Assembly (NCBI RefSeq): GCF_902459465.1
Contig: NC_047074.1
Span: 13,330,001 to 13,394,000 of the forward strand
Origin: Asterias rubens
Taxonomy: Eukaryota
DNA length: 64,000 bases
Reading direction: 5' to 3'
Shown: piece by piece, positions 13,746-57,300 of the stretch
How positions within the stretch are numbered: the stretch's first letter is position 1
Layout: every line of letters begins with the position of its first letter
The notes under the pieces: model-generated
Seen by the model: only the letters and a program-made list of their open reading frames with translations
Told to the model about the DNA's origin: nothing
Database searches by the model: none
Made by a program: the position numbers and the translations under genes

Positions 13746-16700
13746 TTATTTTGACAATGGGAGATATCTTATTGCGGGAGTTCTGCCCTTGTCGCAAAGA
13801 AGATCCTCGGGTTTGGTCTTTTTCGGTGACGGCTACAAAAGAAGAAGAGAGAAGAAAAAACAGGTGTCAGATTTAACAGGTAAACCAAATGCCCTGTCTA
13901 TCACGGGAAAGCTTCATTAAAAAGAGGCTAGAATAAAACATCCTTTTCAATTGACAACTCACACCTGTTATGTCCATGTAATTCCTTTTTCAAACAGTGG
14001 ACTTAAATGGATAATGCACAAACCGGTAGGCTGCTGACAAACCAAGGCAGAGTAACTGATTATCCATTAAGTTTAATCAACCAAAAAGTAATTCATAGTA
14101 AACTTTCTTACCCTTTCTCTTCGTTCTGTAAGTTTGGCATACTCTGTCGCATAAAACTGAAAGACTTCCTCGCAGTCTTTGCGAATCTCGTGTCCTACAG
14201 GATTGTACTGGATGCAGTTGTTATGAACCAACATCATGTCGACATGGAAACCCGAAAAATCATCATACTGGCCACTCTGAAAGCAAAGTGTGTTTTTGTG
14301 ATTTAAAACAAATGATGAAAAGAAGAAAAAACCTGAAACATGGCAATAAACAAACTGGCACTACTTCAATTTATCCGAACAGATTAGAACAATAATTTTT
14401 ACCATTGTGGCCTCAATGGTCAGAAACACCCACAGAGAATAACCGTTTCTAAAATTAATATAAAAATAAAAAAATTTATATTCTAAATATTTCCTACAAT
14501 ATTCATAGTTTGTAACAAATAATTACCGTATATTTCCATTCAAGAAGTTCATTACCATCGTGCAAAATACACACTGCTCTAAACATTATGACAGAACCCA
14601 AGCCAAGGCAAAAGCCAACTCCCACGTTCAGAAAAGGTCCTTTGAGTCGGACAAGGGATAAGCAAGGTGTCTGCTCAATATTGAAGGGAGGTCTAATATT
14701 GTTAAAGTTTTACTAAGTGCACTTATCCACAAAAAGGTGCTCTGTTATAAAGTAAGAGAGAAAAAAAGAAAAAAAACGTGAAGAAAATTCAGTTTAAGAC
14801 TTTTTAATTACCTCCAGTTTCCTCTTGACTGTACCAAAATCCATGGGAGTCTTTATAACTCGATTATAACCAGGCGCTTCAGCAGCTGCAACTATAAGAC
14901 ATCAGAAGAAGAAGAATAACTAGCCATACGGTACAGGTTTTAACACCTGTTCAAACATTGAGTTAGTATTTCATGCAGTGTAAAGATAACTCAGTAATTT
15001 TGTGTGCGAAGAAGTCTTTCAGATGTAGTTATTTTCGTACTTTTCGTAGATATAACAGACTTTCTAGAGTCCGCAGGAATACATTTTCTAGTAAGAATAA
15101 TAAACATTATATCTCTTATGAGAGTAATTATGGGTAAAATTGTTCTATAGAAATTTGGCTAATCTGCAAACATAAATTTGATCTCAGGTTATGGGTTTTT
15201 TGGTGTCATTTTAATTATTTCTAGTTTGACACCTGACACAGTTTGACACACGTCATCATGACATCCTGATTTAGTTGCATCTTCATCATGTTAAGGCTCA
15301 GTTACATCTTAGCTTCAAGGCTCGTTTCCGTTTCATTTTCTGTTAAATTTATTTGACAAAATGTTCAATAAAATCGCAAAAAATCAGTAATGAAAATCAT
15401 TTTGATATCCAAAACTTGCAACGGAGTGAATTCTTTACCTGGTCTTGTAAACCATGAGGCAGCATTCAAGTCCCCCTTGGATCGATTGGCACCTCGGAAT
15501 CGCATCACACGCTGAAGCAAACTAACAAATCAATCAAGAACTAAAAATCAATTAAGAATTGGTAGTTGATCAAGAACTGATAATCAATCAAGAATTGGTA
15601 GATGACCAAGAACTATTAATCAATCAAGAATTGGAAGATGATCAAGAACTGATAATCAATCAAGAATTGGTAGATAATCAAGAACTGATAATCAATCAAG
15701 AACTAACAATAAATCATGAAGTGTTTTTCAATAATTAATAATCAATCAAAGGTAATCAATCACCGATGATCAATCAAGAACTAATAATCAACCAATAAAA
15801 AATTAATAATTAACCAAGACTAAATAAACATATTTAAGAATTCTATGGTATCATCATCTAACAGTAAACCAATAATCAGTTAAAATTGGAAAATTAAACA
15901 ATTTGAAGTATTAAGTAGTAAATCAAGTTGCAACCTAAAAAATAATCATACAAATATTTCAGTTAACAACAATCTTTCAAATTATTTGTGCGGACGAAGT
16001 TCAATCAAATAATTCCTCCGTTAATAATCAATCAAACAAATCAATCACACATTTCAGCAAACAATCGACAATTTCAGTGGATAGTACTACAATCAAACAT
16101 TTTAATGAGTAATAGTCAAACATTCTAGAGGGAAAAAATTGATCAAGCATTTCAATGAAAAAAAAACAATCAAACAGTGGACAAGGATCAATAAAATGTG
16201 TCAATAATCAAACATTTCAATGGACACTAATAAATCAAATACTTCATTGAAGAAATAATCAAAGAAAAGTGTCCGTGGACATCAATCAATCACACATTTT
16301 AGGTGTCAATAGTCAATCACACATTTCTTTTGTCATTAAGCAATTTTGCATTTTGATGGTCAATAATCAATTATCATGTCAATGGACAATAATAATCAAT
16401 AACAATCAATCATTTCAGAGGACAATCATCAACCAAACATTTTTCAAACATCTTCGAAATAATTTTTAGTCCAACGCCTTACTTGAAAGCAGCTCTTGCC
16501 CAACTGGACATGCTGGTGGGTCCGGGCTCATCGTCTATCGGAGCTGGTGCCTTCCGCTTACGACTACTAATCCTGACGTTAAGAGAGTCACTGGTACCCC
16601 GCTCCTCTGATCCTGAACCAGTAGTGACCGTGTAACCACCATCTAAAATAATAATAATAATAATAGTGGCTTCTTTATAATGCATAAAATAATCTGTGAA

Positions 16701-19700: not shown

Positions 19701-22700
19701 AAATATACCTTTGGTTTTTGGAACCGTTTGATCGCTTTAGTTCTATTTAAAAATAGATAAATACAATACAACTGCCTGCTTCTTGAAGTGCCATCACCAA
19801 GGAGCTCTGGAATCACAGTTTGGTCTTGAAGTCTTGTGCTCTTTCACGGACCTGCAAACTTTTTTTATCAAAAGGTGGTCATGTTTTTGAGGTATCATCG
19901 AAAATCCAGAGCGGTTACGTCCACGCAAGAAGAATAATCCATTATTGGTATACACAATCTGAGAAAAATATCCGACAGTTACCCCTCTCAAATTGAGACA
20001 ACTGCTACATCAGTGGTTTTCTAACTGTTGTTCATTTGAATGGACACGCAAACAAATGTGTACCCATGATTCTGGCTGTGCGCATATCCAAACAGACACC
20101 TAGCCGTAGCCAATAGCTGCAGCCAAACAATAGCCTGGTCTTTGTCTTACCTGGGTGTGATCTAAACTCTAGTAACGCTTTAATGGCTGAGGAGGCAGAG
20201 TCAGGTGGCGCTCCATCGTAATCGATCCATTCACTATTGGGATGGAGCCCTCGCTTGACGCTTCCAGCAAACTCTAAAAACACAACAATAGACAAGACAG
20301 TTTATTGAAAATGGCAATTGCCAGAACCTTTATCCTCTGGCAGGTTAACAGGTTAACCTCCGCTCAAGTCTGAATATTAAGTTTACAAACTATTAAAATC
20401 AAGTAAAAAGTCACAAGCACTACTACTTATAAAAATACTAGATCAAGGCGCTGTGAACATTTGAGTTAGAATTGCTACACAGTTCTGTTTTGAGCAATTT
20501 CTTGAATGTAGCAGCGGAGGTAGAAGAGCAGATAATGTGGGGAAGATCGGTTCAAAGGCGGGGAACAATATAACCAAAAGAGCCTTGGCCAATAGATTTG
20601 GAGCAGGGAGTAGCATTCAAGGTGAGTGGGTTCATGAAATGATCGTAGTCTACTGTCCCGGTGATAGAATGATATGAGCCTAGAAAGACAAGATGGAGCC
20701 TGGGAGTTGATGGATTGCCAGATGATCAGGAAAGTAAATCAATAAATATAAAACTTCAAACGCCAATTTGTTTTACCTTCTTTGCTAGGTACCTCATCCA
20801 ACGAGCCTGGAGGTTTACTGCTCTGCAAGGCGTTTGGAGATATTGATGCCACTTGCCGTCTCTATACCAAACAAACGAGAAAGAGAATGACCGTTATCGA
20901 TGGACATCAAATGACCTTTGCATTCGATGAACCCAAATTCAGCTTCATTAGTCGACTAGTGTTTGAGAAAAAAAAAGTGAAAATAACAGAGGGGAGACTC
21001 AAATAAAGTTCCGGGAGTCACAACAAAAAATAATGACTTTTTTTTACTCATTTCGTAACAAACTACAGCAGCTCAGCAAGCATTATTTTAAAGGAAAGCT
21101 TTCTACCATCATTATCTATTAATCGTGTAAGTTTAATGTAAGTCTGTGGACGTTTGTGTTTTTGTGTTGTACAAAAAGTACCCAAACCCTTTAAAAACAC
21201 TAACTTTTCCATTTTTTTTTCAACAAGGATTCCTACCTGATTGGGCTGATTGCCGCTCGTCCTTATTGTTATCGGGCTTCTCATTCGCTTTGGTGATTTC
21301 ACCGTCGTTGTCATGGTAATATTACCATCGGTACTCTGTAATGTTGGAAAGCGAATACTCGAGGCCGACAAATTAGAGGCAGTTGTTGTTGAAGTTACGC
21401 CAGTTACCATGGCGATCCTGGGTCGCTGCAAGAGTGAGCTGGTCATGATATTGTGCACCTGCCAAAAAAAAATTTATGTTGAAAAAAATGTTTAACGATT
21501 ATAAACCAAACTCAAAGGAATGGTATACGTTTGATAATCACTCTTAAAATTTATGGCAAAAAAAACTTAATAGTACTGCAGCTTTCGATAGAACCATTTC
21601 ACTTTAAAGGGTCTATGAAACTTTTGTAGGAAATAAAACACAATGTCCACAGATTTACACTAAACTTACACAGTTTGAAGATAATGATAGTGGAAAGGTT
21701 CCCTGAAAATATTACAAGCTGAGGTGCTGTAGCTTTTGGGGAAATGAGTAAAACAATGTAATGAAAATTATTTTCGTCTCATGAGACGAAAAATTATTTT
21801 AATCATTTACAAACATATTTTCATGACATTGTTTTACTCATTTCTCAAAAAACTACAGCACCTCAGTAAGTAAGATTTGAAGGGAAGCTTTCCAATATCA
21901 TTATCTTCAAACCCTGTAAGTTTAATGTAAATCTATGGACATTTTGAAAAAGTACCCAAATCCTTTAAAGTAAAGTGCTATGGAAAGAATGAGCACTTTT
22001 TATTCCCCAAAGTTTGAATCTGAGAAGCACTACTGTCAGATCCGTGAACGCCGCTCAAGCTTGCTGGGCACTGTGTCCGCCCCACGGAGCTTGCCGCTTG
22101 CCCAACCATCCTCTGGGAGCCTACACAAGGCAAACACTACTGTCAGATCCGTGAACGCCGCTCAAGCTTGCTGGGCACTGTGTCCGCCCCACGGAGCTTG
22201 CCGCTTGCCCAACCATCCTCTGGGAGCCTACACAAGGCAAACACTACTGTCAGATCCGTGAACGCCGCTCAAGCTTGCTGGGCACTGTGTTCGCCCCACG
22301 GAGCTTGCCGCTTGCCCAACCATCCTCTGGGAGCCTACACAAGGCAAACACTACTGTCAGATCCGTGAACGCCGCTCAAGCTTGCTGGGCACTGTGTCCG
22401 CCCCACGGAGCTTGCCGCTTGCCCAACCATCCTCTGGGAGCCTACACAAGGCAAACACTACTGTCAGATCCGTGAACGCCGCTCAAGCTTGCTGGGCACT
22501 GTGTCCGCCCCACGGAGCTTGCCGCTTGCCCAACCATCCTCTGGGAGCCTACACAAGGCAAACACTACTGTCAGATCCGTGAACGCCGCTCAAGCTTGCT
22601 GGGCACTGTGTCCGCCCCACGGAGCTTGCCGCTTGCCCAACCATCCTCTGGGAGCCTACACAAGGCAAACACTACTGTCAGATCCGTGAACGCCGCTCAA

Positions 22701-25700
22701 GCTTGCTGGGCACTGTGTCCGCCCCACGGAGCTTGCCGCTTGCCCAACCATCCTCTGGGAGCCTACACAAGGCAAACACTACTGTCAGATCCGTGAACGC
22801 CGCTCAAGCTTGCTGGGCACTGTGTCCGCCCCACGGAGCTTGCCGCTTGCCCAACCATCCTCTGGGAGCCTACACAAGGCAAACACTACTGTCAGATCCG
22901 TGAACGCCGCTCAAGCTTGCTGGGCACTGTGTCCGCCCCACGGAGCTTGCCGCTTGCCCAACCATCCTCTGGGAGCCTACACAAGGCAAAGCCTCTCGTG
23001 TGAGAAGATGTCTCTCCTTCCTAGACTCCCTGAAACGTGACACCGGCTTGGCCGAGATGTCTCTCCCTGAAACGTGACACCGGCTTGGCCGAGATGTCTC
23101 TCCCTGAAACGTGACACCGGCTTGGCCGAGATGTCTCTCCCTGAAACGTGACACCGGCTTGGCCGAGATGTCTCTCCCTGAAACGTGACACCGGCTTGGC
23201 CGAGATGTCTCTCCCTGAAACGTGACACCGGCTTGGCCGAGATGTCTCTCCCTGAAACGTGACACCGGCTTGGCCGAGATGTCTTTCCCTGAAACGTGTC
23301 ACCGGCTTGGCCGAGATGTCTCTCCCTGAAACGTGACACCGGCTTGGCCGAGATGTCTTTCCCTGAAACGTGACACCGGCTTGGCCGAGATGTCTCTCCC
23401 TGAAACGTGACACCGGCTTGGCCGAGATGTCTCTCCCTGAAACGTGACACCGGCTTGGCCGAGATGTCTCTCCCTGAAACGTGACACCGGCTTGGCCGAG
23501 ATGTCTTTCCCTGAAACGTGACACCGGCTTGGCCGAGATGTCTCTCCCTGAAACGTGACACCGGCTTGGCCGAGATGTCTCTCCCTGAAACGTGACACCG
23601 GCTTGGCCGAGATGTCTCTCCCTGAAACGTGACACCGGCTTGGCCGAGATGTCTCTCCCTGAAACGTGACACCGGCTTGGCCGAGATGTCTCTCCCTGAA
23701 ACGTGACACCGGCTTGGCCGAGATGTCTCTCCCTGAAACGTGACACCGGCTTGGCCGAGATGTCTCTCCCTGAAACGTGACACCGGCTTGGCCGAGATGT
23801 CTCTCCCTGAAACGTGACACCGGCTTGGCCGAGATGTCTCTCCCTGAAACGTGACACCGGCTTGGCCGAGATGTCTCTCCCTGAAACGTGACACCGGCTT
23901 GGCCGAGATGTCTCTCCCTGAAACGTGACACCGGCTTGGCCGAGATGTCTCTCCCTGAAACGTGACACCGGCTTGGCCGAGATGTCTCTCCCTGAAACGT
24001 GACACCGGCTTGGCCGAGATGTCTCTCCCTGAAACGTGACACCGGCTTGGCCGAGATGTCTCTCCCTGAAACGTGACACCGGCTTGGCCGAGATGTCTCT
24101 CCCTGAAACGTGACACCGGCTTGGCCGAGATGTCTCTCCCTGAAACGTGACACCGGCTTGGCCGAGATGTCTCTCCCTGAAACGTGACACCGGCTTGGCC
24201 GAGATGTCTCTCCCTGAAACGTGACACCGGCTTGGCCGAGATGTCTCTCCCTGAAACGTGACACCGGCTTGGCCGAGATGTCTCTCCCTGAAACGTGACA
24301 CCGGCTTGGCCGAGATGTCTCTCCCTGAAACGTGACACCGGCTTGGCCGAGATGTCTCTCCCTGAAACGTGACACCGGCTTGGCCGAGATGTCTCTCCCT
24401 GAAACGTGACACCGGCTTGGCCGAGATGTCTCTCCCTGAAACGTGACACCAGCTTGGCCGAGATGTCTCTCCCTAAACGTGACACCGGCTTGGCCGAGAT
24501 GTCTCTCCCTGAAACGTGACACCGGCTTGGCCGAGATGTCTCTCCCTGAAACGTGACACCGGCTTGGCCGAGATGTCTCTCCCTGAAACGTGACACCGGC
24601 TTGGCCGAGATGTCTCTCCCTGAAACGTGACACCGGCTTGGCCGAGATGTCTCTCCCTGAAACGTGACACCGGCTTGGCCGAGATGTCTCTCCCTGAAAC
24701 GTGACACCGGCTTGGCCGAGATGTCTCTCCCTGAAACGTGACACCGGCTTGGCCGAGATGTCTCTCCCTGAAACGTGACACCGGCTTGGCCGAGATGTCT
24801 CTCCCTGAAACGTGACACCGGCTTGGCCGAGATGTCTCTCCCTGAAACGTGACACCGGCTTGGCCGAGATGTCTCTCCCTGAAACGTGACACCGGCTTGG
24901 CCGAGATGTCTCTCCCTGAAACGTGACACCGGCTTGGCCGAGATGTCTCTCCCTGAAACGTGACACCGGCTTGGCCGAGATGTCTCTCCCTGAAACGTGA
25001 CACCGGCTTGGCCGAGATGTCTCTCCCTGAAACGTGACACCGGCTTGGCCGAGATGTCTCTCCCTGAAACGTGACACCGGCTTGGCCGAGATGTCTCTCC
25101 CTGAAACGTGACACCAGCTTGGCCGAGATGTCTCTCCCTAAAACGTGACACCGGCTTGGCCGAGATGTCTCTCCCTGAAACGTGACACCGGCTTGGCCGA
25201 GATGTCTCTCCCTGAAACGTGACACCGGCTTGGCCGAGATGTCTCTCCCTGAAACGTGACACCGGCTTGGCCAGCCCTGAAGAACTACGCTCCTGCATGC
25301 TGGACCGGAACATCTGGAGAGAAACCACTGGGCAGGCTCGAGCTTCCACATGGCGCTCGACTTGATGATGACTGTCAGATACAGTTCTCAGATTGTGTTT
25401 TCCAATTGAAGATTATTCTTCAATCAACAACATGACTGCTCCTGATTTTCAGTTATATTCCAAAAAGGCCTTTTGCGATGAAATTTTCACAGGTTAGTTT
25501 TATTGTATATCTACATTTGTACAGGACTAAAAAATCTGACAGTTCCACAAATCAAAGGTAAATGTTCCCCTTAAACAGCGATGACCCTGAATAGTTGTCA
25601 GTACTTACTGGTGAGTTTTTAGCTGACTCTGTGAGTTGAGCTGGAGATGGTTGAGGGTGTGCTTTGTGCATCATCACAACGCTTGTCTTACCAGTCATCT

Positions 25701-28700
25701 TCTGTGTACCACTCGTCAACGATTGGCCAACATCTGAACAAAACAAACAAAAACTAACATTATTATATTTTTCCAGACTTTTTATTTTAACGAATTAGAC
25801 CATAAATGGATTTTTTCAGTGTTGTACTCGTTCTCACAGGGCTCGAATTTTACACTGCATTTCTGAGGCCAGTGATTTTAGCTACGGGCCAATAAAATTA
25901 TGACTGGACCAAGACCGACTGTCTCAGGTTTTTCAATTTAATACTAATACCTTTCTGCGTAATGATTCTATATTAACAAAAAAATTATGTTACAATTTTG
26001 GTTGAGTCTGGTATAATATATTTCAATTTAAAAACAGTATCAAAGTACACTTGCATACAATAAGAATAGAAAACTTCTCAGAACCAACACTACTCAAAAC
26101 AGATGTACACATGGCACTACTGAAAACCTCACATAACTATACTCCGACCATGCAAAGGTTTCTAATCCTACTTACTTGTAATTGTGGCAGCTTTGAAGCT
26201 CTGGACAGTCTTTGGTTTGTTGGTTCCAGCAATGCTGACGATGCCTCCAGGCTTAGGCCTGGGCTATAACAAGCCTAACCTAACTATACTCACACCATGC
26301 AAAGTTTCAAATCCTACTTACTTGTAATTGTGGCAGCTTTGAAGCTCTGGACAGTCTTTGGTTTGTTGGTTCCAGCAATGCTGATGATACCTCCAGGCTT
26401 AGGCCTGGGCTATCACAAGCCTAACCTAACTATACTCACACCATGCAAAGGTTTCTAATCCTACTTACTTGTAATTGTGGCAGCTTTGAAGCTCTGGACA
26501 GTCTTTGGTTTGTTGGTTCCAGCAATGCTGACGATGCCTCCAGGCTTAGGCCTGGGCTATCACAAGCCTAACCTAACTATACTCACACCATGCAAAGGTT
26601 TCTAATCCTACTTACTTGTAATTGTGGCAGCTTTGAAGCTCTGGACAGTCTTTGGTTTGTTGGTTCCAGCAATGCTGACGATGCCTCCAGGCTTAGGCCT
26701 GGGCTATCACAAGCCTAACCTAACTATACTCACACCATGCAAAGGTTTCTAATCCTACTTACTTGTAATTGTGGCAGCTTTGAAGCTCTGGACAGTCTTT
26801 GGTTTGTTGGTTCCAGCAATGCTGACGATGCCTCCAGGCTTAGGCCTGGGCTATCACAAGCCTAACCTAACTATACTCACACCATGCAAAGGTTTCTAAT
26901 CCTACTTACTTGTAATTGTGGCAGCTTTGAAGCTCTGGACAGTCTTTGGTTTGTTGGTTCCAGCAATGCTGACGATGCCTCCAGGCTTAGGCCTGGGCTA
27001 TCACAAGCCTAACCTAACTATACTCACACCATGCAAAGGTTTCTAATCCTACTTACTTGTAGTTGTGGCAGCTTTGAAGCTCTGGACAGTCTTTGGTTTG
27101 TTGGTTCCAGCAATGCTGATGATACCTCCAGGCTTAGGTCTAGGCTATCACAAGCCTAACCTAACTATACTCCGACCATGCAAAGGTTTCTAATCCTACT
27201 TACTTGTAGTTGTGGCAGCTTTGAAGCTCTGGACAGTCTTTGGTTTGTTGGTTCCAGCAATGCTGATGATACCTCCAGGCTTAGGCCTAGATACGGGAGA
27301 CATCGATGACATGTGATGAGAGATAACTCCGGCTGAACTTGTTCCAATCACTACTTTATTACCTACATTGTTAAAATGTTAACAATACAAGAAAATCAAA
27401 ATTCACAGCACTGCTTATTGGTAAGATTATTTTTTTTAATTACTATGGCAAAAAATGTTGCTTAAGCTTAAGCATTTTTTAGAGGCGACCAGCTTGTGCG
27501 TATCCACCATGGATTTGCATTGTTGCGTCATTCATTTTCATAAAGTAAGCAGCGGAAGGTTAGGATGCCTTTTCGTGTACTTACGGTAAGCAGCAGAATG
27601 GCAATCTCACAGTAAGCACAAAATCCACTGTTAAGCAACTCTGCATTTCTGTTCGCAGAGCTGTCCAAAACTGGTCAACAGGAGCCTAATCCAAAACCAT
27701 TAGTCTCTCCTCAATTGGCTTTAAGATATTCTTGACTCAAGAAAAGTATATCTGAAAATCAGTGCTTGCCCAGAAAAAGCGGAAAACTGGTGATCAAAAG
27801 CGCATAATTCTTCAATAAGTAGAGCCATGAATTTGGGCCCAGGTGGTGGGATGTCCATTTTGTTTGGTCTCACCTGCTATTGTAGTCACAGGCATGGAGG
27901 TCATCATAGCAGGGGATGGCATCGACGTCTTGGAGGTCGTTTCTATGGTAACAGTAGGTTGACCCATTGACCTCTGGTGTTTACTAGTAGCAGTGACACT
28001 GACAGACTGACTGAAACTTTTCACACCTTGTAACAAGAAAAGATGTAAACTATGCTTATATACATATTCATGACCAGAACAGTAAATACATATTCAGTCT
28101 ATGCTGAAGTCTATGCTGGTCTCTAATTGGCCAAACATTGGCGTTATTATTTTATGCATATTTCATGACCCGAAAAGTGCCACTGCCTTTAAATACAAAT
28201 GTGTTTGAAAAAAAGTTTACCTGTCTCTGATTTGATTTGTTGCTTCCTATTGCTTGCGTTCATACCGGGCCCCATTTGGGTCGTCACATCGGGGTGCTGT
28301 GCCATCTGCTTCATCAGTTTCTGTTTGCCGACAGCTCTCACCCGAGGCTTCCCGGCCATGTTTGTAGATACGTAGGATGCCATCTGTGAGCTTATCAATG
28401 ATGCTGGGTGTAAAGAATTTGAAATACAAAGTAATTAGAGTACAATTAGGTGAGGTTTGCGGTAGCACCATTTGTAAATCTCTTTTGATTAGTGTTAGTT
28501 CTAAAAAGAACTGGTGGTTGATAAATCAACGTTTCTATCAGTAGGTCATTTTGAGTTGAAAACTGACAAGAAGGCAGGGGTCGATTTCACAAAGAGTTAG
28601 GACTCGTCTTATCTCGAGTTAGGACGAGTAACTCGTCTTAACTTAGGATTAATCTTAAGGTCCGCATGCTACAGTGCAGGGTTGGGACTCGACCTAAGTC

Positions 28701-31700: not shown

Positions 31701-33161
31701 TATTTTATGGCCCTTACTTTAGGAAGGCTGAAATAATGGAGGAGGTGGTAAGGGTTTAAAATCCTGCGTACCTTTTACTGGAATGGAGATGCCGCAGGGT
31801 AAAACTACAACATTGGGCGAAGGGCTCGGAGGCTGATGCTGAGGTTTCATTCCAACACTGCTATTCTCATTTCCAATCGGTACTTTAACCAAAAATACCA
31901 CAAATAGTTATTTTAACAGCACTGCACTCCTGGAATTACACAGAGTCCTATGCTATTAATCCCCTATTGTTTTACTCATTTCCCAAAAAACTACAGCACC
32001 TCAGCACGTAGTATTTTCAGGGAAGCTTTCTACTATCATTATCTTCAAACTGTGTAAGTTTAGTGTTAATCTGTGGACATTGTGTTTTTTGTCCTACAAA
32101 AGTTACATAGACCCTTTAAGGCAAAGCTCTAACGACGAAAAACAAATCATCACAGTAGTAGTTTTTCACAATTAAACAAAAGTTAGGAAAAATTGTCTTA
32201 CTTTCTTTTCTAGCCGTTTCCGAGGGCAAAGGAAGTGTGAGATTATGGCTGAATGCTGCATTGGCTGCCTGGTTAGCCGTTAATGAGAACACAGTCTGTG
32301 GTACAAGCCTCGGCATCAGGGGTATCAGACGACGTCCTTCAATGGCCCACTCTGCAGAGTTATTTGGTCCGCTCAATCTGGGTCGGATCAAGCAGTCATG
32401 TTTCAATCAAAACAAAATTCTTAGGTTTAGGCGATTAACATATTGGTCTGATAAACCCAAAAAAATGCACTACAACATGGTCCAATTTCTTGGCTTTGCT
32501 TACAGCCAAATTCTGTGCTGATGATCACCATTCTCCCCTTACTGGGCAAGCGCCAAATGTAAGCGAAGAATGCCTAATAACGTAGAGCACGCATGGGTAC
32601 AACAAAAACTTCCCTGCTCACTGGTAAAATAAGCACGAAGGTAAGCGTTGCTTCTTTGTTTAATAAGGTAAGCAGAGCAAAGAAATTTGGCCCAGAAGAC
32701 CGTACACCAAAAGTGTAAGAATTTAATGGCCTGGGTTTACATCCAGTTTGTCATACCTCTCCGCAACTGTGGATAGTTTTTCATCGTTGACGGCTCTTCG
32801 GACCTCAGCACGATGACGTTCTGTAGAAATACTACAGGAGATAAAGTATGAACGTCAGTCACGGCAGATGGTTATATTTTGTTGCGTCAGTACAAACACA
32901 AAAAGCAAAAGGTTTAATCCCGAGTCGACCAAAACTTGGGAGGTAGCATATTAAAAAAGAATGGACCATTACCCTTAATATTTACTTCCCAATTTATTAC
33001 CTGAGTGTCGTTGATAGTTCGTTGAGAATATTTTTCTTGTCTTTGGTCAAATCACCCTGGGCACGGAACGCGCTGACAATCCCAGCGTATGCCTCAAGTT
33101 CAGTTCGTCTTAATAATCTCTTGCACTCGTCTTTACTCATGTCCAGTAGCTTCGGCCACAT
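13746..33161 (-). CDS. EMSY: BRCA2-interacting transcriptional repressor EMSY homolog with N-terminal ENT domain and C-terminal bromodomain, 1323 aa
   Basis: Coding exons on the minus strand: 33001-33161, 32757-32831, 32202-32377, 31772-31882, 30653-31083, 29698-30127, 28221-28403, 27874-28026, 27204-27362, 25609-25733, 21237-21458, 20777-20861, 20151-20273, 19381-19650, 18111-18619, 17472-17655, 16483-16642, 15439-15521, 14812-14891, 14112-14276, 13746-13832. All are GT-AG and in phase, 3972 nt. The N-terminus MWPKLLDMSKDECKRLLRRTELEAYAGIVSAFRAQGDLTK...ISTERHRAEVRRAVNDE...EGRRLIPLMPRLVPQT is the EMSY ENT domain. Boundaries in the low-complexity middle exons are less certain. Confidence 0.88.
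15525..16440. repeat. Degenerate AATCAATCAAGAA-type low-complexity tandem repeat in an EMSY intron
   Basis: Many imperfect AATCAATCAA(GAA) units, most regular at 15525-15720. Confidence 0.6.
16757..17030 (+). mobile_element. L2/CR1-clade LINE 3' end nested in a family-A MITE fragment
   Basis: Encodes SFSLAAPGLWNHLP..IR.S.SL..FKKALKKHLF*, typical of the L2-type ORF2 C-terminus, followed by an (ATTGT)n tail; it interrupts the family-A sequence. Confidence 0.75.
17212..17377. mobile_element. Harbinger-like MITE (CGATTTCAC..GTGAAATCG); related copy in opposite orientation at 28578-28744
   Basis: Short TIRs with CCTAACTTAGG-rich interior; the 28578 copy is flanked by CAG on both sides. Confidence 0.6.
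20460..20720 (-). mobile_element. Decayed L2/CR1-clade LINE 3' fragment
   Basis: Minus strand reads GQGSFGYIVPRL*TDLPHIICSSTSAATFKKLLKTEL, a degraded RAFS..APRLWN.LP motif. Confidence 0.55.
21608..21964. mobile_element. TTAA-flanked MITE, family C (Kolobok-like); partial inverted copy at ~31970-32114
   Basis: TTAA flanks and internal inverted GAGGTGCTGTAG / CTACAGCACCTC. The two ends do not match each other well, so it may be chimeric. Confidence 0.55.
22028..22990. repeat. 107-bp tandem repeat, 9 copies
   Basis: Period 107 (ORF starts at 22168, 22275, 22382...); copies nearly identical. Confidence 0.97.
22042..25370 (+). mobile_element. 5'-truncated RTE-clade LINE expanded internally by two minisatellites
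   Basis: With the arrays collapsed it reads IRER[1-nt deletion]LKLAGHCVRPTELAACPTILWEPTQGKASRVRRCLSFLDSLKRDTGLASPEELRSCMLDRNIWRETTGQARASTWRST*, then a (TGA)n tail. TSD ACTGTCAGAT at 22032-22041 and 25371-25380. Confidence 0.85.
23028..25272. repeat. 37-bp tandem repeat, about 60 copies
   Basis: Unit CCCTGAAACGTGACACCGGCTTGGCCGAGATGTCTCT; few variants. Confidence 0.97.
26140..27290 (-). repeat. 147-bp tandem repeat (8 copies) made of the 3' half of EMSY exon 27204-27362 plus its splice donor
   Basis: The donor-equivalent boundary recurs at 27204, 27057, 26910, 26763, 26616, 26469, 26322 and 26176. Confidence 0.93.
28748..29135. mobile_element. hAT-like MITE with CGATAT-rich subterminal repeats
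   Basis: TIRs TAAGCCTGGGCGATAT / ATATCGCCCAAGCTTA; degenerate 8-bp TSD GGTGGCAG / GACGGCAG. Confidence 0.7.
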
Positions 33162-53839: not shown

Positions 53840-55005
53840 GGACATCGCAAATATATATTGACGCCAATATTGACGCCAATATTTGCGACTTTTACCCCAA
53901 GTTGCAAATATTGACGCCAATATTGACGCCAATATTCACGACTTGGCCCAAAGTCGCAAATATTGACGCCAATATTGACGCCAATATTCACGACTTGGCC
54001 CAAAGTCGCAAATATTGACGCCAATATTGACGCCAATATTCACGACATGGGCCCTATGTCGCAAATATTGACGCCAATATTGACGCCAATATTCACAACA
54101 TGGGTCAAATGTCGCAAATATTGATGCCAATATTGACGCCAAAATTCACGACATGGGCCCTATGTCGCAAATATTGACGCCAATTGACGCCAATATTCAC
54201 GACATGGGCCCTATGTCGCAAATATTGACGCCAATATTCACGCCAATATTCACGACATGGGCTACACGTCGCAAATATTGACGCCAATATTGACGCCAAT
54301 ATTCACGACATAGCCCAAGTCGCAAACCCACTCAGGCGTGAATTTTTTTTAAAGCAACTTGGGGAGTCAGAGCGCGCGAGCGAGATCGGGACCAGTGCGC
54401 CAGACTATTTTCTTGCCCACCCAGCTACCTAGGTTGCTAAAAAAACAATGAATATTCACGCCTGAGCGGGTTTGCGACTTGGGGCCCATGTCGTGAATGT
54501 TGGCGTAAATATTTGCGACTTGGGGCCCATGTCGTGAATATTGGCGTCAATATTGGCGTCAATATTTGCGACTTGGAGGCAATGTCGTAAATATTGGCGC
54601 CAATATTGGCGTCAATATTCGCGACTTAGGTCATGTCGTGAATATTGGCGTCAATATTGGCGTCAATATTTGCAACTTGAGGCTATGTCGTAAATATTGG
54701 CGTCAATATTGGCGTCAATATTTGCGACATAGGGCCCATGTCGTGAATATTGGCGTCAATATTGGCGTCAATATTTGCGTCAATATTTGACCCATGTTGT
54801 GAATATTGGCGTCAATATTGGCGTCAATATTTGCGACATAGGGCCCATGTCGTGAATATTGGCGTCAATATTGGCGTCAATATTTGCGACTTTGGGCCAA
54901 GTCGTGAATATTGGCGTCAATATTGGCGTCAATATTTGCAACTTGGGGTAAAAGTCGCAAATATTGGCGTCAATATTGGCGTCAATATATATTTGCGATG
55001 TCCCT
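53840..55005. mobile_element. Foldback-type element with ~490-bp inverted arms of 12-bp ATATTGACGCCA subrepeats and TTAA flanks
   Basis: TTAA|AGGGACATCGCAAATAT ... ATATTTGCGATGTCCCT|TTAA with a ~105-bp central spacer; a second, left-truncated copy at 55611-~56695. Confidence 0.85.
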
Positions 55006-57300
55006 TTAAAGCCACCATAAGTTTGTACGCACAGTTCGCCATATTTGGGACAGAATCTCCTTCCACACCGGAACCAACTTGTTGTCAGTTTTTCATATAA
55101 GGGCCCAGACCTAAACATGCCTTCCTCCATGGGCCAAACTAGTCTGTTTCCCAAGCCAGAAACTTTGAAGCAAACGTTTATAGAGTTTCTTCAAAAGTTG
55201 AAGCACACGAACCCCAAGGCTTTGTTGTCAACAATTCCCTTCCGTTCCATAATGAATGTCATGTTTAATCTTCAGTGCTTTATGGTTGAGATTGTAAAGA
55301 ATTAGATGAAAGGTTGAAAAATTAGCCAGGTTAGAGGCCCGTTTCATGGGCGATTTTTTAAGGCGAATTTGTCCACCACCTCCGATGATGAAGAATAAAT
55401 GAATGAATAATGGATGCACGCTTAATTGGCAAGACTCATTTTAAAAAATGTGACGTCATGGACGCATGAACAATCAAATCACATTATGCTAATGAGCGGA
55501 ATTTTTGTTGGCACGACACCGCGGGTCTATTTTTTGTGACCTTTTCTGCTTTTGTTCCTCTGTGGAAAAGAATCACCGGGAACCATAGCCCGAGTCATCA
55601 GTGTGATCTTTGACGCCAATATTCACGCCAATATTCACGACTTGGCCCAAAGTCGCAAATATTGACGCCAATATTCACGCCAATATTCACGACTTGGCCC
55701 AAAGTCGCAAATATTGACGCCAATATTGACGCCAATATTCACGACATGGGCCCTATGTCGCAAATATTGACGCCAATATTGACGCCAATATTCACAACAT
55801 GGGTCAAATGTCGCAAATATTGATGCCAATATTGACGCCAAAATTCACGACATGGGCCCTATGTCGCAAATATTGACGCCAATATTGACGCCAATATTCA
55901 CGACATGGGCCCTATGTCGCAAATATTGACGCCAATATTCACGCCAATATTCACGACATGGGCTACACGTCGCAAATATTGACGCCAATATTGACGCCAA
56001 TATTCACGACATAGCCCAAGTCGCAAACCCACTCAGGCGTGAATTTTTTTTAAAGCAACTTGGGGAGTCAGAGCGCGCGAGCGAGATCGGGACCAGTGCG
56101 CCAGACTATTTTCTTGCCCACCCAGCTACCTAGGTTGCTAAAAAAACAATGAATATTTACGCCTGAGCGGGTTTGCGACTTGGGGCCCATGTCGTGAATA
56201 TTGGCGTAAATATTTGCGACTTGGGGCCCATGTCGTGAATATTGGCGTCAATATTGGCGTCAATATTTGCGACTTGGAGGCAATGTCGTAAATATTGGCG
56301 CCAATATTGGCGTCAATATTCGCGACTTAGGTCATGTCGTGAATATTGGCGTCAATATTTGCAACTTGAGGCTATGTCGTAAATATTGGCGTCAATATTG
56401 GCGTCAATATTTGCGACATAGGGCCCATGTCGTGAATATTGGCGTCAATATTGGCGTCAATATTTGCGTCAATATTTGACCCATGTTGTGAATATTGGCG
56501 TCAATATTGGCGTCAATATTTGCGACATAGGGCCCATGTCGTGAATATTGGCGTCAATATTGGCGTCAATATTTGCGACTTTGGGCCAAGTCGTGAATAT
56601 TGGCGTCAATATTGGCGTCAATATTTGCAACTTGGGGTAAAAGTCGCAAATATTGGCGTCAATATTGGCGTCAATATATATTTGCGATGTCCCTTTAAAG
56701 CCACCATAAGTTTGTACGCACAGTTCGCCATATTTGGGACAGAATCTCCTTCCACACCGGAACCAACTTGTTGTCAGTTTTTCATATAAGGGCCCAGACC
56801 TAAACATGCCTTCCTCCATGGGCCAAACTAGTCTGTTTCCCAAGCCAGAAACTTTGAAGCAAACGTTTATAGAGTTTCTTCAAAAGTTGAAGCACACGAA
56901 CCCCAAACCTTTGTTGTCAACAATTCCCTTCCGTTCCATAATGAATGTCATGTTTAATCTTCAGTGCTTTATGGTTGAGATTGTAAAGAATTAGATGAAA
57001 GGTTGAAAAATTAGCCAGGTTAGAGGCCCGTTTCATGGGCGATTTTTTAAGGCGAATTTGTCCACCACCTCCGATGATGAAGAATAAATGAATGAATAAT
57101 GGATGCACGCTTAATTGGCAAGACTCATTTTAAAAAATGTGACGTCATGGACGCATGAACAATCAAATCACATTATGCTAATGAGCGGAATTTTTGTTGG
57201 CATGACACCGCGGGTCTATTTTTTGTGACCTTTTCTGCTTTTGTTCCTCTGTGGAAAAGAATCACCGGGAACCATAGCCCGAGTCATCAGTGTGATCTTT
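53920..57300. repeat. ~1689-bp direct tandem duplication
   Basis: Matching ORFs are offset by exactly 1689 (54750/56439, 55045/56734, 55228/56917); junction GTGATCTTT|GACGCC at 55610/55611. Confidence 0.9.

What the first reader, a model, noticed from the sequence alone, without database searches (positions are those of the whole stretch)
22017..25394. A ~250-bp RTE LINE remnant inflated to 3.3 kb by two different minisatellites between intact TSDs
Seen: collapsing both arrays gives a continuous RTE-like ORF2 C-terminus, a (TGA)n tail and a 10-bp TSD (ACTGTCAGAT). The 107-bp unit spans the 5' insertion junction and contains flank, TSD and LINE sequence, so the TSD itself is repeated nine times. 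The 37-bp unit is a rearranged internal LINE segment: AGATGTCTCTCC is joined to CTGAAACG across a CTCC microhomology, dropping TTCCTAGACTC. The pre-insertion site also lies in the loop of a small AATCTGAGAA / TTCTCAGATT inverted repeat. Inference: this shows the birth of two minisatellites from one retrotransposon copy, with the 107-bp expansion occurring after or during integration. The near-identical units imply a recent or ongoing expansion in an EMSY intron.
Basis: partly seen in the sequence, partly recalled or inferred. Interest (0 to 1): 0.75.

Follow-up and report, generated by a model that had tools for sequence, protein, structure and literature searches.

The report
LINE stub swollen by two minisatellites
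A 254-base dead end-piece of a jumping gene in an intron region of a sea-star EMSY gene has grown to 3.3 kb through two local tandem repeats, one of them spanning the insertion junction; this is real in the assembly but ordinary for a genome full of such repeats.

Summary
Window 22042-25370 is a 5'-truncated 3' end (about 254 bp once collapsed) of an RTE-type LINE. It has a (TGA)3 tail and a perfect 10-bp target-site duplication, ACTGTCAGAT (22032-22041 and 25371-25380).

Two in-situ arrays inflate it:
- 107 bp x 9.0 (22028-22990). Each unit holds 10 bp of flank, 4 bp of junction microhomology and 93 bp of LINE.
- 37 bp x 60 (23054-25272). The unit comes from an adjacent LINE segment that lost 12 bp between two CTCC.

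The collapsed sequence aligns to more than 20 other genomic copies with a single 1-bp gap. It encodes the last 78 residues of their endonuclease/reverse-transcriptase ORF. All three novel junction words occur only at this locus in the 417.6-Mb genome. Paralogous copies of an older repeat that hosts the insertion cross the empty site with one copy of the target.

The flanking inverted repeat is perfect only in this copy of the host repeat (imperfect in paralogs) and is not shown to be a targeting signal. The organism is a sea star. "Recent" is inferred. No tool would give reads, so copy numbers are unverified.

TE-derived and boundary-spanning minisatellites are known. This scan has already noted many on other DNA of this genome. 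Interest is low to moderate.

The parts
21998..22041 (.). 5' flank. It belongs to an older interspersed repeat that hosts the LINE insertion. It includes the left inverted-repeat arm AATCTGAGAA at 22017-22026.
   Evidence: Paralogous copies L041-L043 (73-74% identity) and L037 (88%) align across the empty site.
22032..22041 (+). 5' copy of the target-site duplication ACTGTCAGAT. Its last 4 bp (AGAT) are also LINE sequence, giving junction microhomology.
   Evidence: Direct reading. Other LINE copies read GAAGATCCGTGAAC at this point. Paralogous empty sites hold one copy of the word.
22028..22990 (+). 107-bp minisatellite, 9.0 units. Each unit is 10 bp of flank (CACTACTGTC), then AGAT, then 93 bp of LINE. 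There is no microhomology at the unit boundaries.
   Evidence: TRF gives 99% matches. Per-unit listing shows 8 identical units and 1 substitution. The unit-junction 20-mer is found 8 times, all at this locus. Boundary check.
22991..23053 (+). Single-copy LINE segment. It holds the source of the 37-bp unit, running from AGATGTCTCTCC through TTCCTAGACTCC to GGCTTGGCC.
   Evidence: Collinear with other copies.
23054..25272 (+). 37-bp minisatellite, 60 added units. Variants sit at units 7, 9, 13, 38, 39, 56 and 57. The pairs 38/39 and 56/57 repeat the same two-variant pattern 18 units apart.
   Evidence: TRF gives 60.8 copies at 99%. Unit census. The unit junction (60 hits) and the 12-bp-deletion junction (59 hits) occur only here.
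25273..25362 (+). Last part of the LINE ORF (endonuclease/RT protein C-terminus), ending in ...WRST.
   Evidence: blastx against the C20 copy's ORF and against homologs P0002-P0100. DNA alignment.
25363..25371 (+). (TGA)3 tail. The first TGA is the ORF's stop codon. The last A is shared with the TSD.
   Evidence: Other copies carry 3 to about 10 TGA repeats.
25371..25380 (+). 3' copy of the target-site duplication ACTGTCAGAT.
25381..25574 (.). 3' flank, the continuation of the host repeat. It includes the right inverted-repeat arm TTCTCAGATT at 25385-25394.
33000..33122 (-). EMSY N-terminal (ENT) domain exon, the only ENT match in the genome.
   Evidence: 43.8 bits, over the curated cut-off.
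14169..14279 (-). Bromodomain exon at the 3' end of the same gene.
Evidence: 25.3 bits, over the cut-off.

Best explanation
An RTE-type LINE inserted by target-primed reverse transcription into an older interspersed repeat inside the EMSY gene of a sea star, antisense to the gene. The insertion was heavily 5'-truncated to about 254 bp. It was joined to the upstream target through 4 bp of microhomology (AGAT) and made a 10-bp target-site duplication. Two separate small tandem duplications then arose in place.

The first copied 107 bp across the 5' junction. The second copied about 50 bp of LINE sequence ending at GGCTTGGCC, and its unit was shortened to 37 bp by a 12-bp loss between two CTCC. 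Unequal exchange or replication slippage then expanded them to 9 and about 61 copies and keeps the units nearly identical.

Shown: the anatomy, the LINE homology, the TSD, the paralogous empty sites and the locus-specificity. Inferred: the order of events, the expansion mechanism, recency and neutrality. No function is indicated. This is one instance of the high background rate of minisatellite birth in this genome, which ignores feature boundaries.
For: - Arrays and their unit census.
- The collapsed sequence aligns with one 1-bp gap to more than 20 family copies at 88-93%.
- The ORF C-terminus is retained for 78 aa.
- The family encodes Exo_endo_phos plus RVT_1. Its ORF ends in the (TGA)n tail. 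Homologs are roughly 1000-aa proteins on 3.2-4 kb contigs. This matches the RTE structure described in PMC1291365.
- All three novel junctions are unique to the locus.
- Paralogs of the host repeat cross the empty site with a single target copy.
- Variant pairs 18 units apart indicate block duplication within the array.
- Other copies of the family carry perfect two-copy duplications, each with 3-bp microhomology: 76 bp in the C22 copy and 86 bp in the C20 copy. These look like the seed stage of the same process.
- Minisatellites are common here. They cover 13.5% of the window and 7.3% of 78 kb of other loci, where there are five arrays of at least 300 bp.
Against: - No raw reads could be examined, so copy numbers and even array length rest on one assembly.
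- The founding 107-bp duplication shows no microhomology. That fits end-joining or template switching but does not identify a mechanism.
- Unit identity could reflect homogenisation rather than youth.
- RTE clade membership was not tested by phylogeny.
Confidence: 0.85

Rival explanations
1. The founding 107-bp duplication, or the whole 107-bp array, was made during integration. On this reading the reverse transcriptase jumped from the RNA onto the upstream target DNA, copied about 14 nt of it, and jumped back to the RNA at ...GGCAAA. This would have happened once or repeatedly.
For: The unit joins target DNA to LINE sequence exactly at the microhomology-mediated 5' junction. The unit boundaries have no microhomology. 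An earlier unchecked note in this genome proposes template switching in another RTE copy (s1-151251).
Against: The unit begins 4 bp upstream of the TSD, outside the staggered-cut interval. Nine cycles with identical switch points are improbable. The same genome makes boundary-spanning minisatellites at exon edges, where no reverse transcription is involved. The neighbouring 37-bp and 147-bp arrays need no such mechanism.
Confidence: 0.07
2. Assembly artefact: the arrays exist, but their copy numbers are inflated or deflated by the assembler, or a shorter heterozygous allele was expanded.
For: No reads were available. One 36-bp unit differs by a homopolymer-type indel, which is typical of long-read error.
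Against: Variant units form an ordered, non-random pattern, with paired variants 18 units apart. The array edges are exactly collinear with the LINE. The 3.3-kb total is shorter than typical long reads; that last point rests on my own knowledge, not on a tool result.
Confidence: 0.06
3. The 37-bp array was already present in the source LINE and was retrotransposed with it.
For: None was found. It is conceivable only because the array lies wholly inside LINE sequence.
Against: The unit-junction and deletion-junction words are absent from every other place in the genome. None of the other copies scored in the homology search has the array.
Confidence: 0.02

Closest known systems
TE-derived minisatellites (review PMC9659126, which cites about 7,276 TE-derived minisatellites in the human genome, and LINE ORF2- or 3'-end-derived satellites in hamster, seal, cetaceans and chicken)
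   Same: An internal piece of a retrotransposon copy, here the ORF2 3' end, is tandemly amplified at one locus.
   Different: Two independent arrays sit in one 254-bp remnant. One unit is a locally rearranged version of the source (12-bp loss). The arrays have not spread to other loci.
"Mirage" minisatellites of amphioxus, which are tandem repeats spanning exon-intron boundaries (PMC3087553)
   Same: A tandem repeat whose unit straddles a boundary between two unrelated sequence features. This shows that the duplication process is blind to features. Units are near-identical and length instability is expected.
   Different: The boundary here is flank/TSD to LINE, not exon to intron. No splice signal of the host gene is copied.
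RTE clade non-LTR retrotransposons (RTE-1, SR2, SR3; PMC1291365)
   Same: A single roughly 1000-aa ORF with AP endonuclease and RT. A body of about 3.2 kb. A minimal 3' UTR ending in short tandem repeats. Frequent 5' truncation. A TSD.
   Different: The 3' UTR has zero length, because the stop codon is the first TGA of the tail. Clade placement by phylogeny was not done here.
Tandem TE dimers from double insertion as satellite seeds (Drosophila model of McGurk and Barbash 2018; cited from memory, not read here)
   Same: TE-junction sequence, including target-site sequence, ends up inside a repeat unit.
   Different: The unit here is not a whole element between TSDs. It is 14 bp of target plus only the first 93 bp of the truncated LINE, so double insertion does not explain it.

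Membership tests
RTE clade LINE | Single large ORF (about 920-1066 aa) with an N-terminal AP endonuclease and a reverse transcriptase | tested here: met
   In the C20 copy (L033), Exo_endo_phos scores 6.8e-8 and RVT_1 scores 1.1e-25 in one frame. The frame is split only by a copy-specific 86-bp duplication. Homologs are 1000-1045 aa. The feature definition comes from PMC1291365.
RTE clade LINE | Very short 3' UTR ending in short (3-5 nt) tandem repeats rather than poly(A) | tested here: met
   A (TGA)n tail is present in all 15 aligned copies. The ORF stops at the first TGA.
RTE clade LINE | Element length of about 3.2-3.9 kb | tested here: inconclusive
   From ORF start to tail is about 3.2 kb in L033.
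RTE clade LINE | RT and endonuclease phylogeny groups the family with RTE-1, BovB and Rex3 | not testable with these tools
   No named reference sequences were returned. The hits carry no clade names.
LINE insertion by target-primed reverse transcription | 3' tail intact, 5' truncation, flanking TSD, empty site elsewhere | tested here: met
   A 10/10 TSD and truncation at a 4-bp microhomology. Paralogous, not allelic, empty sites are seen in four copies of the host repeat.
Minisatellite | Head-to-tail units of roughly 10-100+ bp in a locus-specific array of 0.5 kb or more | tested here: met
   107 bp x 9 = 963 bp and 37 bp x 60.8 = 2,247 bp. Both are unique to the locus.
Minisatellite | Copy-number polymorphism between alleles or individuals | not testable with these tools
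"Mirage" (exon-boundary) minisatellite | The unit spans an exon-intron boundary of the host gene | tested here: not met
   The unit spans a flank/LINE boundary inside the gene span and no exon is involved. It works like a mirage but is not one.

The most novel reading that the evidence does not exclude
The seed of the 107-bp junction-spanning array was created in the act of integration. On this reading the LINE reverse transcriptase jumped onto the upstream target DNA and back onto its RNA. Retrotransposition itself, not later replication or repair, would then plant a minisatellite seed containing the target site.
Probability: 0.07. Interest if true: 0.55.

Novelty: new member of a known kind. 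Interest (0 to 1): 0.28.

Why it matters
The source sequence, the insertion junction, the TSD and a local 12-bp rearrangement are all still legible, and related LINE copies show the two-copy seed stage. That makes this a clean teaching example of how minisatellites are born from a transposon fragment. It also adds to the evidence that this sea-star genome duplicates short segments without regard to feature boundaries. It does not open a new question. TE-derived minisatellites and boundary-spanning minisatellites are documented, and this scan has already met many in this genome. Practically, the 3.3-kb block is GC- and CpG-rich (59.6% GC, 240 CpG) and sits in an AT-rich EMSY intron region. It could serve as a hypervariable marker.

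Tried and rejected
- Hairpin-driven slippage. Single-strand DNA folds of both units, on both strands, and of the source segment are no more stable than shuffles (z from -1.07 to +0.82). Rejected as unsupported.
- Recurrent breakpoint hot spot at GGCTTGGCC|AGC. The C22 copy's 76-bp duplication ends at the same place, within 3 bp, as the 37-bp unit. A genome-wide pattern scan for two such motifs 61-91 bp apart found only this locus, the C22 copy and three unrelated places. Two events are too few, so this is left as a coincidence.
- Array inherited from the source element, or a dispersed satellite. Rejected.
- Inverted repeat as a LINE target signal. The two arms lie in the older host repeat. Paralogs keep one arm or the other imperfectly. 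Not supported.
- The L010 26-bp x 45 array next to another copy of the LINE. It is not LINE-derived.
- Naming the clade from database names. The word-index protein search returned 315 relatives, but none carries a clade name.
- Pfam scan of ten minus-strand ORFs to place the EMSY exons next to the locus. Nothing was found.
- A random 400-kb genome sample for a base rate. The base rate was instead estimated from 78 kb of already fetched, non-random loci.
Full report
**What is there.** Reading the window, Tandem Repeats Finder and a per-unit census agree on the layout.
- A 107-bp array of exactly 9.0 units lies at 22028-22990. Eight units are identical and one has a single substitution.
- A 63-bp single-copy stretch follows at 22991-23053.
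- Next come 60 further units of 37 bp at 23054-25272. Fifty-three are identical and seven are variants, one of them 36 bp long.
- TRF counts 60.8 copies from 23026, because the last 28 bp of the single-copy stretch already match the unit.
- A 98-bp single-copy stretch ends in TGATGATGA.
- The word ACTGTCAGAT stands at 22032-22041 and 25371-25380. It also stands inside every 107-bp unit.

**It is a LINE 3' end.** Searches of the window's own genome with the 3' stretch and with one 107-bp unit plus the middle stretch each found dozens of copies.
- With one unit of each array kept, the sequence aligns from AGATCCGTGAAC to the tail with more than 20 fetched copies. Identity is 88-93%, with a single 1-bp gap.
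- The collapsed LINE is 93 + 63 + 98 = 254 bp. Add 4 bp if the shared AGAT is counted.
- A long copy on contig C20 (L033) has Exo_endo_phos and RVT_1 in one reading frame. That frame runs into the tail.
- 315 database relatives were found. Among the best 120 listed, most are 1000-1045-aa proteins with the same domains, on 3.2-4 kb contigs. They include proteins from sea urchin, brittle star and amphioxus.
- The collapsed window sequence has one early stop, caused by the 1-bp gap. It then stays open for 78 aa to the family's own stop.
- It is 87% identical to the C20 protein (E 7e-49) and 43-55% identical to the last ~72 residues of the foreign homologs.
- The stop codon is the first TGA of the (TGA)n tail, so the 3' UTR has zero length.
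- A single ~1000-aa endonuclease/RT ORF, a body of about 3.2 kb and a minimal 3' UTR ending in short repeats are the structural hallmarks of the RTE clade as summarised in PMC1291365.
- I could not run a phylogeny with named references. The clade label therefore rests on structure.

**The insertion and its target.**
- Other copies read GAAGATCCGTGAAC where the window reads flank-CAGATCCGTGAAC. The truncated cDNA was therefore joined to the target through 4 bp of microhomology (AGAT).
- Both flanks belong to an older interspersed repeat.
- Four paralogous copies of that repeat align straight across the junction, with one copy of ...ACTGTCAGA-TACA.... They are L037 at 88% identity and L041-L043 at 73-74%.
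- These are paralogous empty sites. They show that 22042-25370 is an insertion and that the 10-bp word was single before it.
Paralogs keep one arm or the other imperfectly.
- The inverted repeat is therefore real, but nothing shows that it guided the LINE.

**Both arrays were born here.**
- The 37-bp unit junction GGCTTGGCC|GAGATGTCTC occurs 60 times in the 417.6-Mb assembly, always in this array.
- The 107-bp unit junction occurs 8 times, all here.
- The junction made by the 12-bp loss (AGATGTCTCTCC|CTGAAACG) occurs 59 times, all here.
- No other LINE copy scored carries either array.
- The 107-bp unit is 10 bp of flank, then AGAT, then 93 bp of LINE. It starts 4 bp upstream of the TSD and shows no microhomology at its edges. 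It cannot predate the insertion.
- The 37-bp unit equals the adjacent source segment minus 12 bp between two CTCC. It also differs by one extra G (or a 3-nt loss) at its 5' end.

**How it grew.**
- Units 38/39 and 56/57 of the 37-bp array repeat the same two-variant pattern: a CCGG to CCAG change, followed by a unit altered in CTGAAACG. They lie 18 units apart.
- That pattern is the signature of a block duplication by unequal exchange.
- Within-array identity is about 99.5-99.9%. The LINE copy differs by 7-12% from its nearest relatives.
- This points to recent turnover, although homogenisation could mimic youth.
- Single-strand folds give no sign of unusual hairpins.
- Other copies of the family show what a seed looks like. 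The C22 copy has a perfect 76-bp x 2 duplication. The C20 copy has a perfect 86-bp x 2 duplication inside the RT, which breaks the frame.
- Each of those two has 3-bp microhomology.
- The C22 duplication ends at the same GGCTTGGCC|AGC point as the 37-bp unit. A genome-wide motif-pair scan found no further cases, so I treat this as coincidence.

**Context.**
- The only ENT-domain exon in the genome is at window 33000-33122 on the minus strand.
- A bromodomain exon lies at 14169-14279, also on the minus strand.
- The locus is therefore inside the EMSY gene span and the LINE is antisense to the gene.
- Intron status is inferred. Ten minus-strand ORFs nearby gave no Pfam signal.
- The 790-aa minus-strand ORF through the array is a mechanical consequence of a stop-free unit.
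- Earlier notes of this scan name the organism as the common starfish. I did not check the species independently.

**How unusual.**
- Period-10-or-longer tandem repeats cover 13.5% of this window. This includes a 147-bp x 7.9 array only 730 bp away.
- They cover 7.3% of 78 kb of other fetched loci, which hold five arrays of at least 300 bp. That sample is biased.
- The scan's notebook lists hundreds of minisatellite notes for this genome. They include a SINE-derived 60-bp x 106 array, a minisatellite made of a LINE tail plus an exon junction, and exon-boundary minisatellites of the "mirage" kind.
- Those notes are leads, not evidence. They agree with what I measured.
- The literature documents thousands of TE-derived minisatellites in humans and LINE ORF2- or 3'-end-derived satellites in several vertebrates (PMC9659126).
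- It also documents boundary-spanning minisatellites in amphioxus (PMC3087553).

**Limits.**
- Unit counts, polymorphism and expression are therefore untested.
Copies were only compared.

**Verdict.** This is a well-preserved but ordinary instance of known processes: a new member of a known kind.

Noticed in passing
window 21700-21973: A palindromic, MITE-like element lies just upstream. Its last ~86 bp (21885-21970) match at 97-100% at nearly all of the 40 places scored, out of 1,171 first-look candidates. This points to a very young, high-copy family.
   Followed up: partly
window 26127-27288: A third young minisatellite (147 bp x 7.9, 97% matches) lies 730 bp downstream. That makes three arrays of 0.96-2.2 kb within 5.3 kb of one gene region. 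It is the subject of another first-reader note (s1-150570).
   Followed up: no
window 53855-57300: A 1,689-bp x 2.0 higher-order duplication (98% matches) contains 53-bp arrays in both orientations.
   Followed up: no
L033 3396-3570 (G000:C20:6030395-6030569): An otherwise near-intact copy of the LINE has a perfect 86-bp x 2 duplication with 3-bp microhomology. It covers the RT active-site region, where the unit's DNA starts TTTGCGGATGAT, and it splits the ORF into 841-aa and 255-aa pieces. Other copies have one unit.
   Followed up: yes
L035 618-772 (G000:C22:4707517-4707671): Another copy of the LINE has a perfect 76-bp x 2 duplication. Its 3' edge coincides, within 3 bp, with the 3' edge of the window's 37-bp unit (GGCTTGGCC|AGC).
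   Followed up: partly
L004-L010, L017, L018, L023 and others: The main subfamily of this LINE is 97-99.6% identical between copies, and its ORF stop is the first TGA of the (TGA)n tail. This suggests recent activity and a zero-length 3' UTR.
   Followed up: partly
window 22042-25370: The inflated insert is 59.6% GC with 240 CpG (obs/exp 0.82). The flanks are 35-38% GC (obs/exp 0.53-0.66). This makes a CpG-island-like block inside the gene. On the gene's sense strand each 37-bp unit reads TTTCAG|G and CG|GTGTCA, which are splice-site-like words whose use is untested.
   Followed up: no
L010 1-1180; L004 1941-3004; L039 122-660 and 2212-3086: Unrelated minisatellites (26 bp x 45, 73 bp x 14.7, 31 bp x 17.4, 119 bp x 7.4) turned up in 3-kb loci that were fetched for other reasons. 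This shows how dense such arrays are in this genome.
   Followed up: partly
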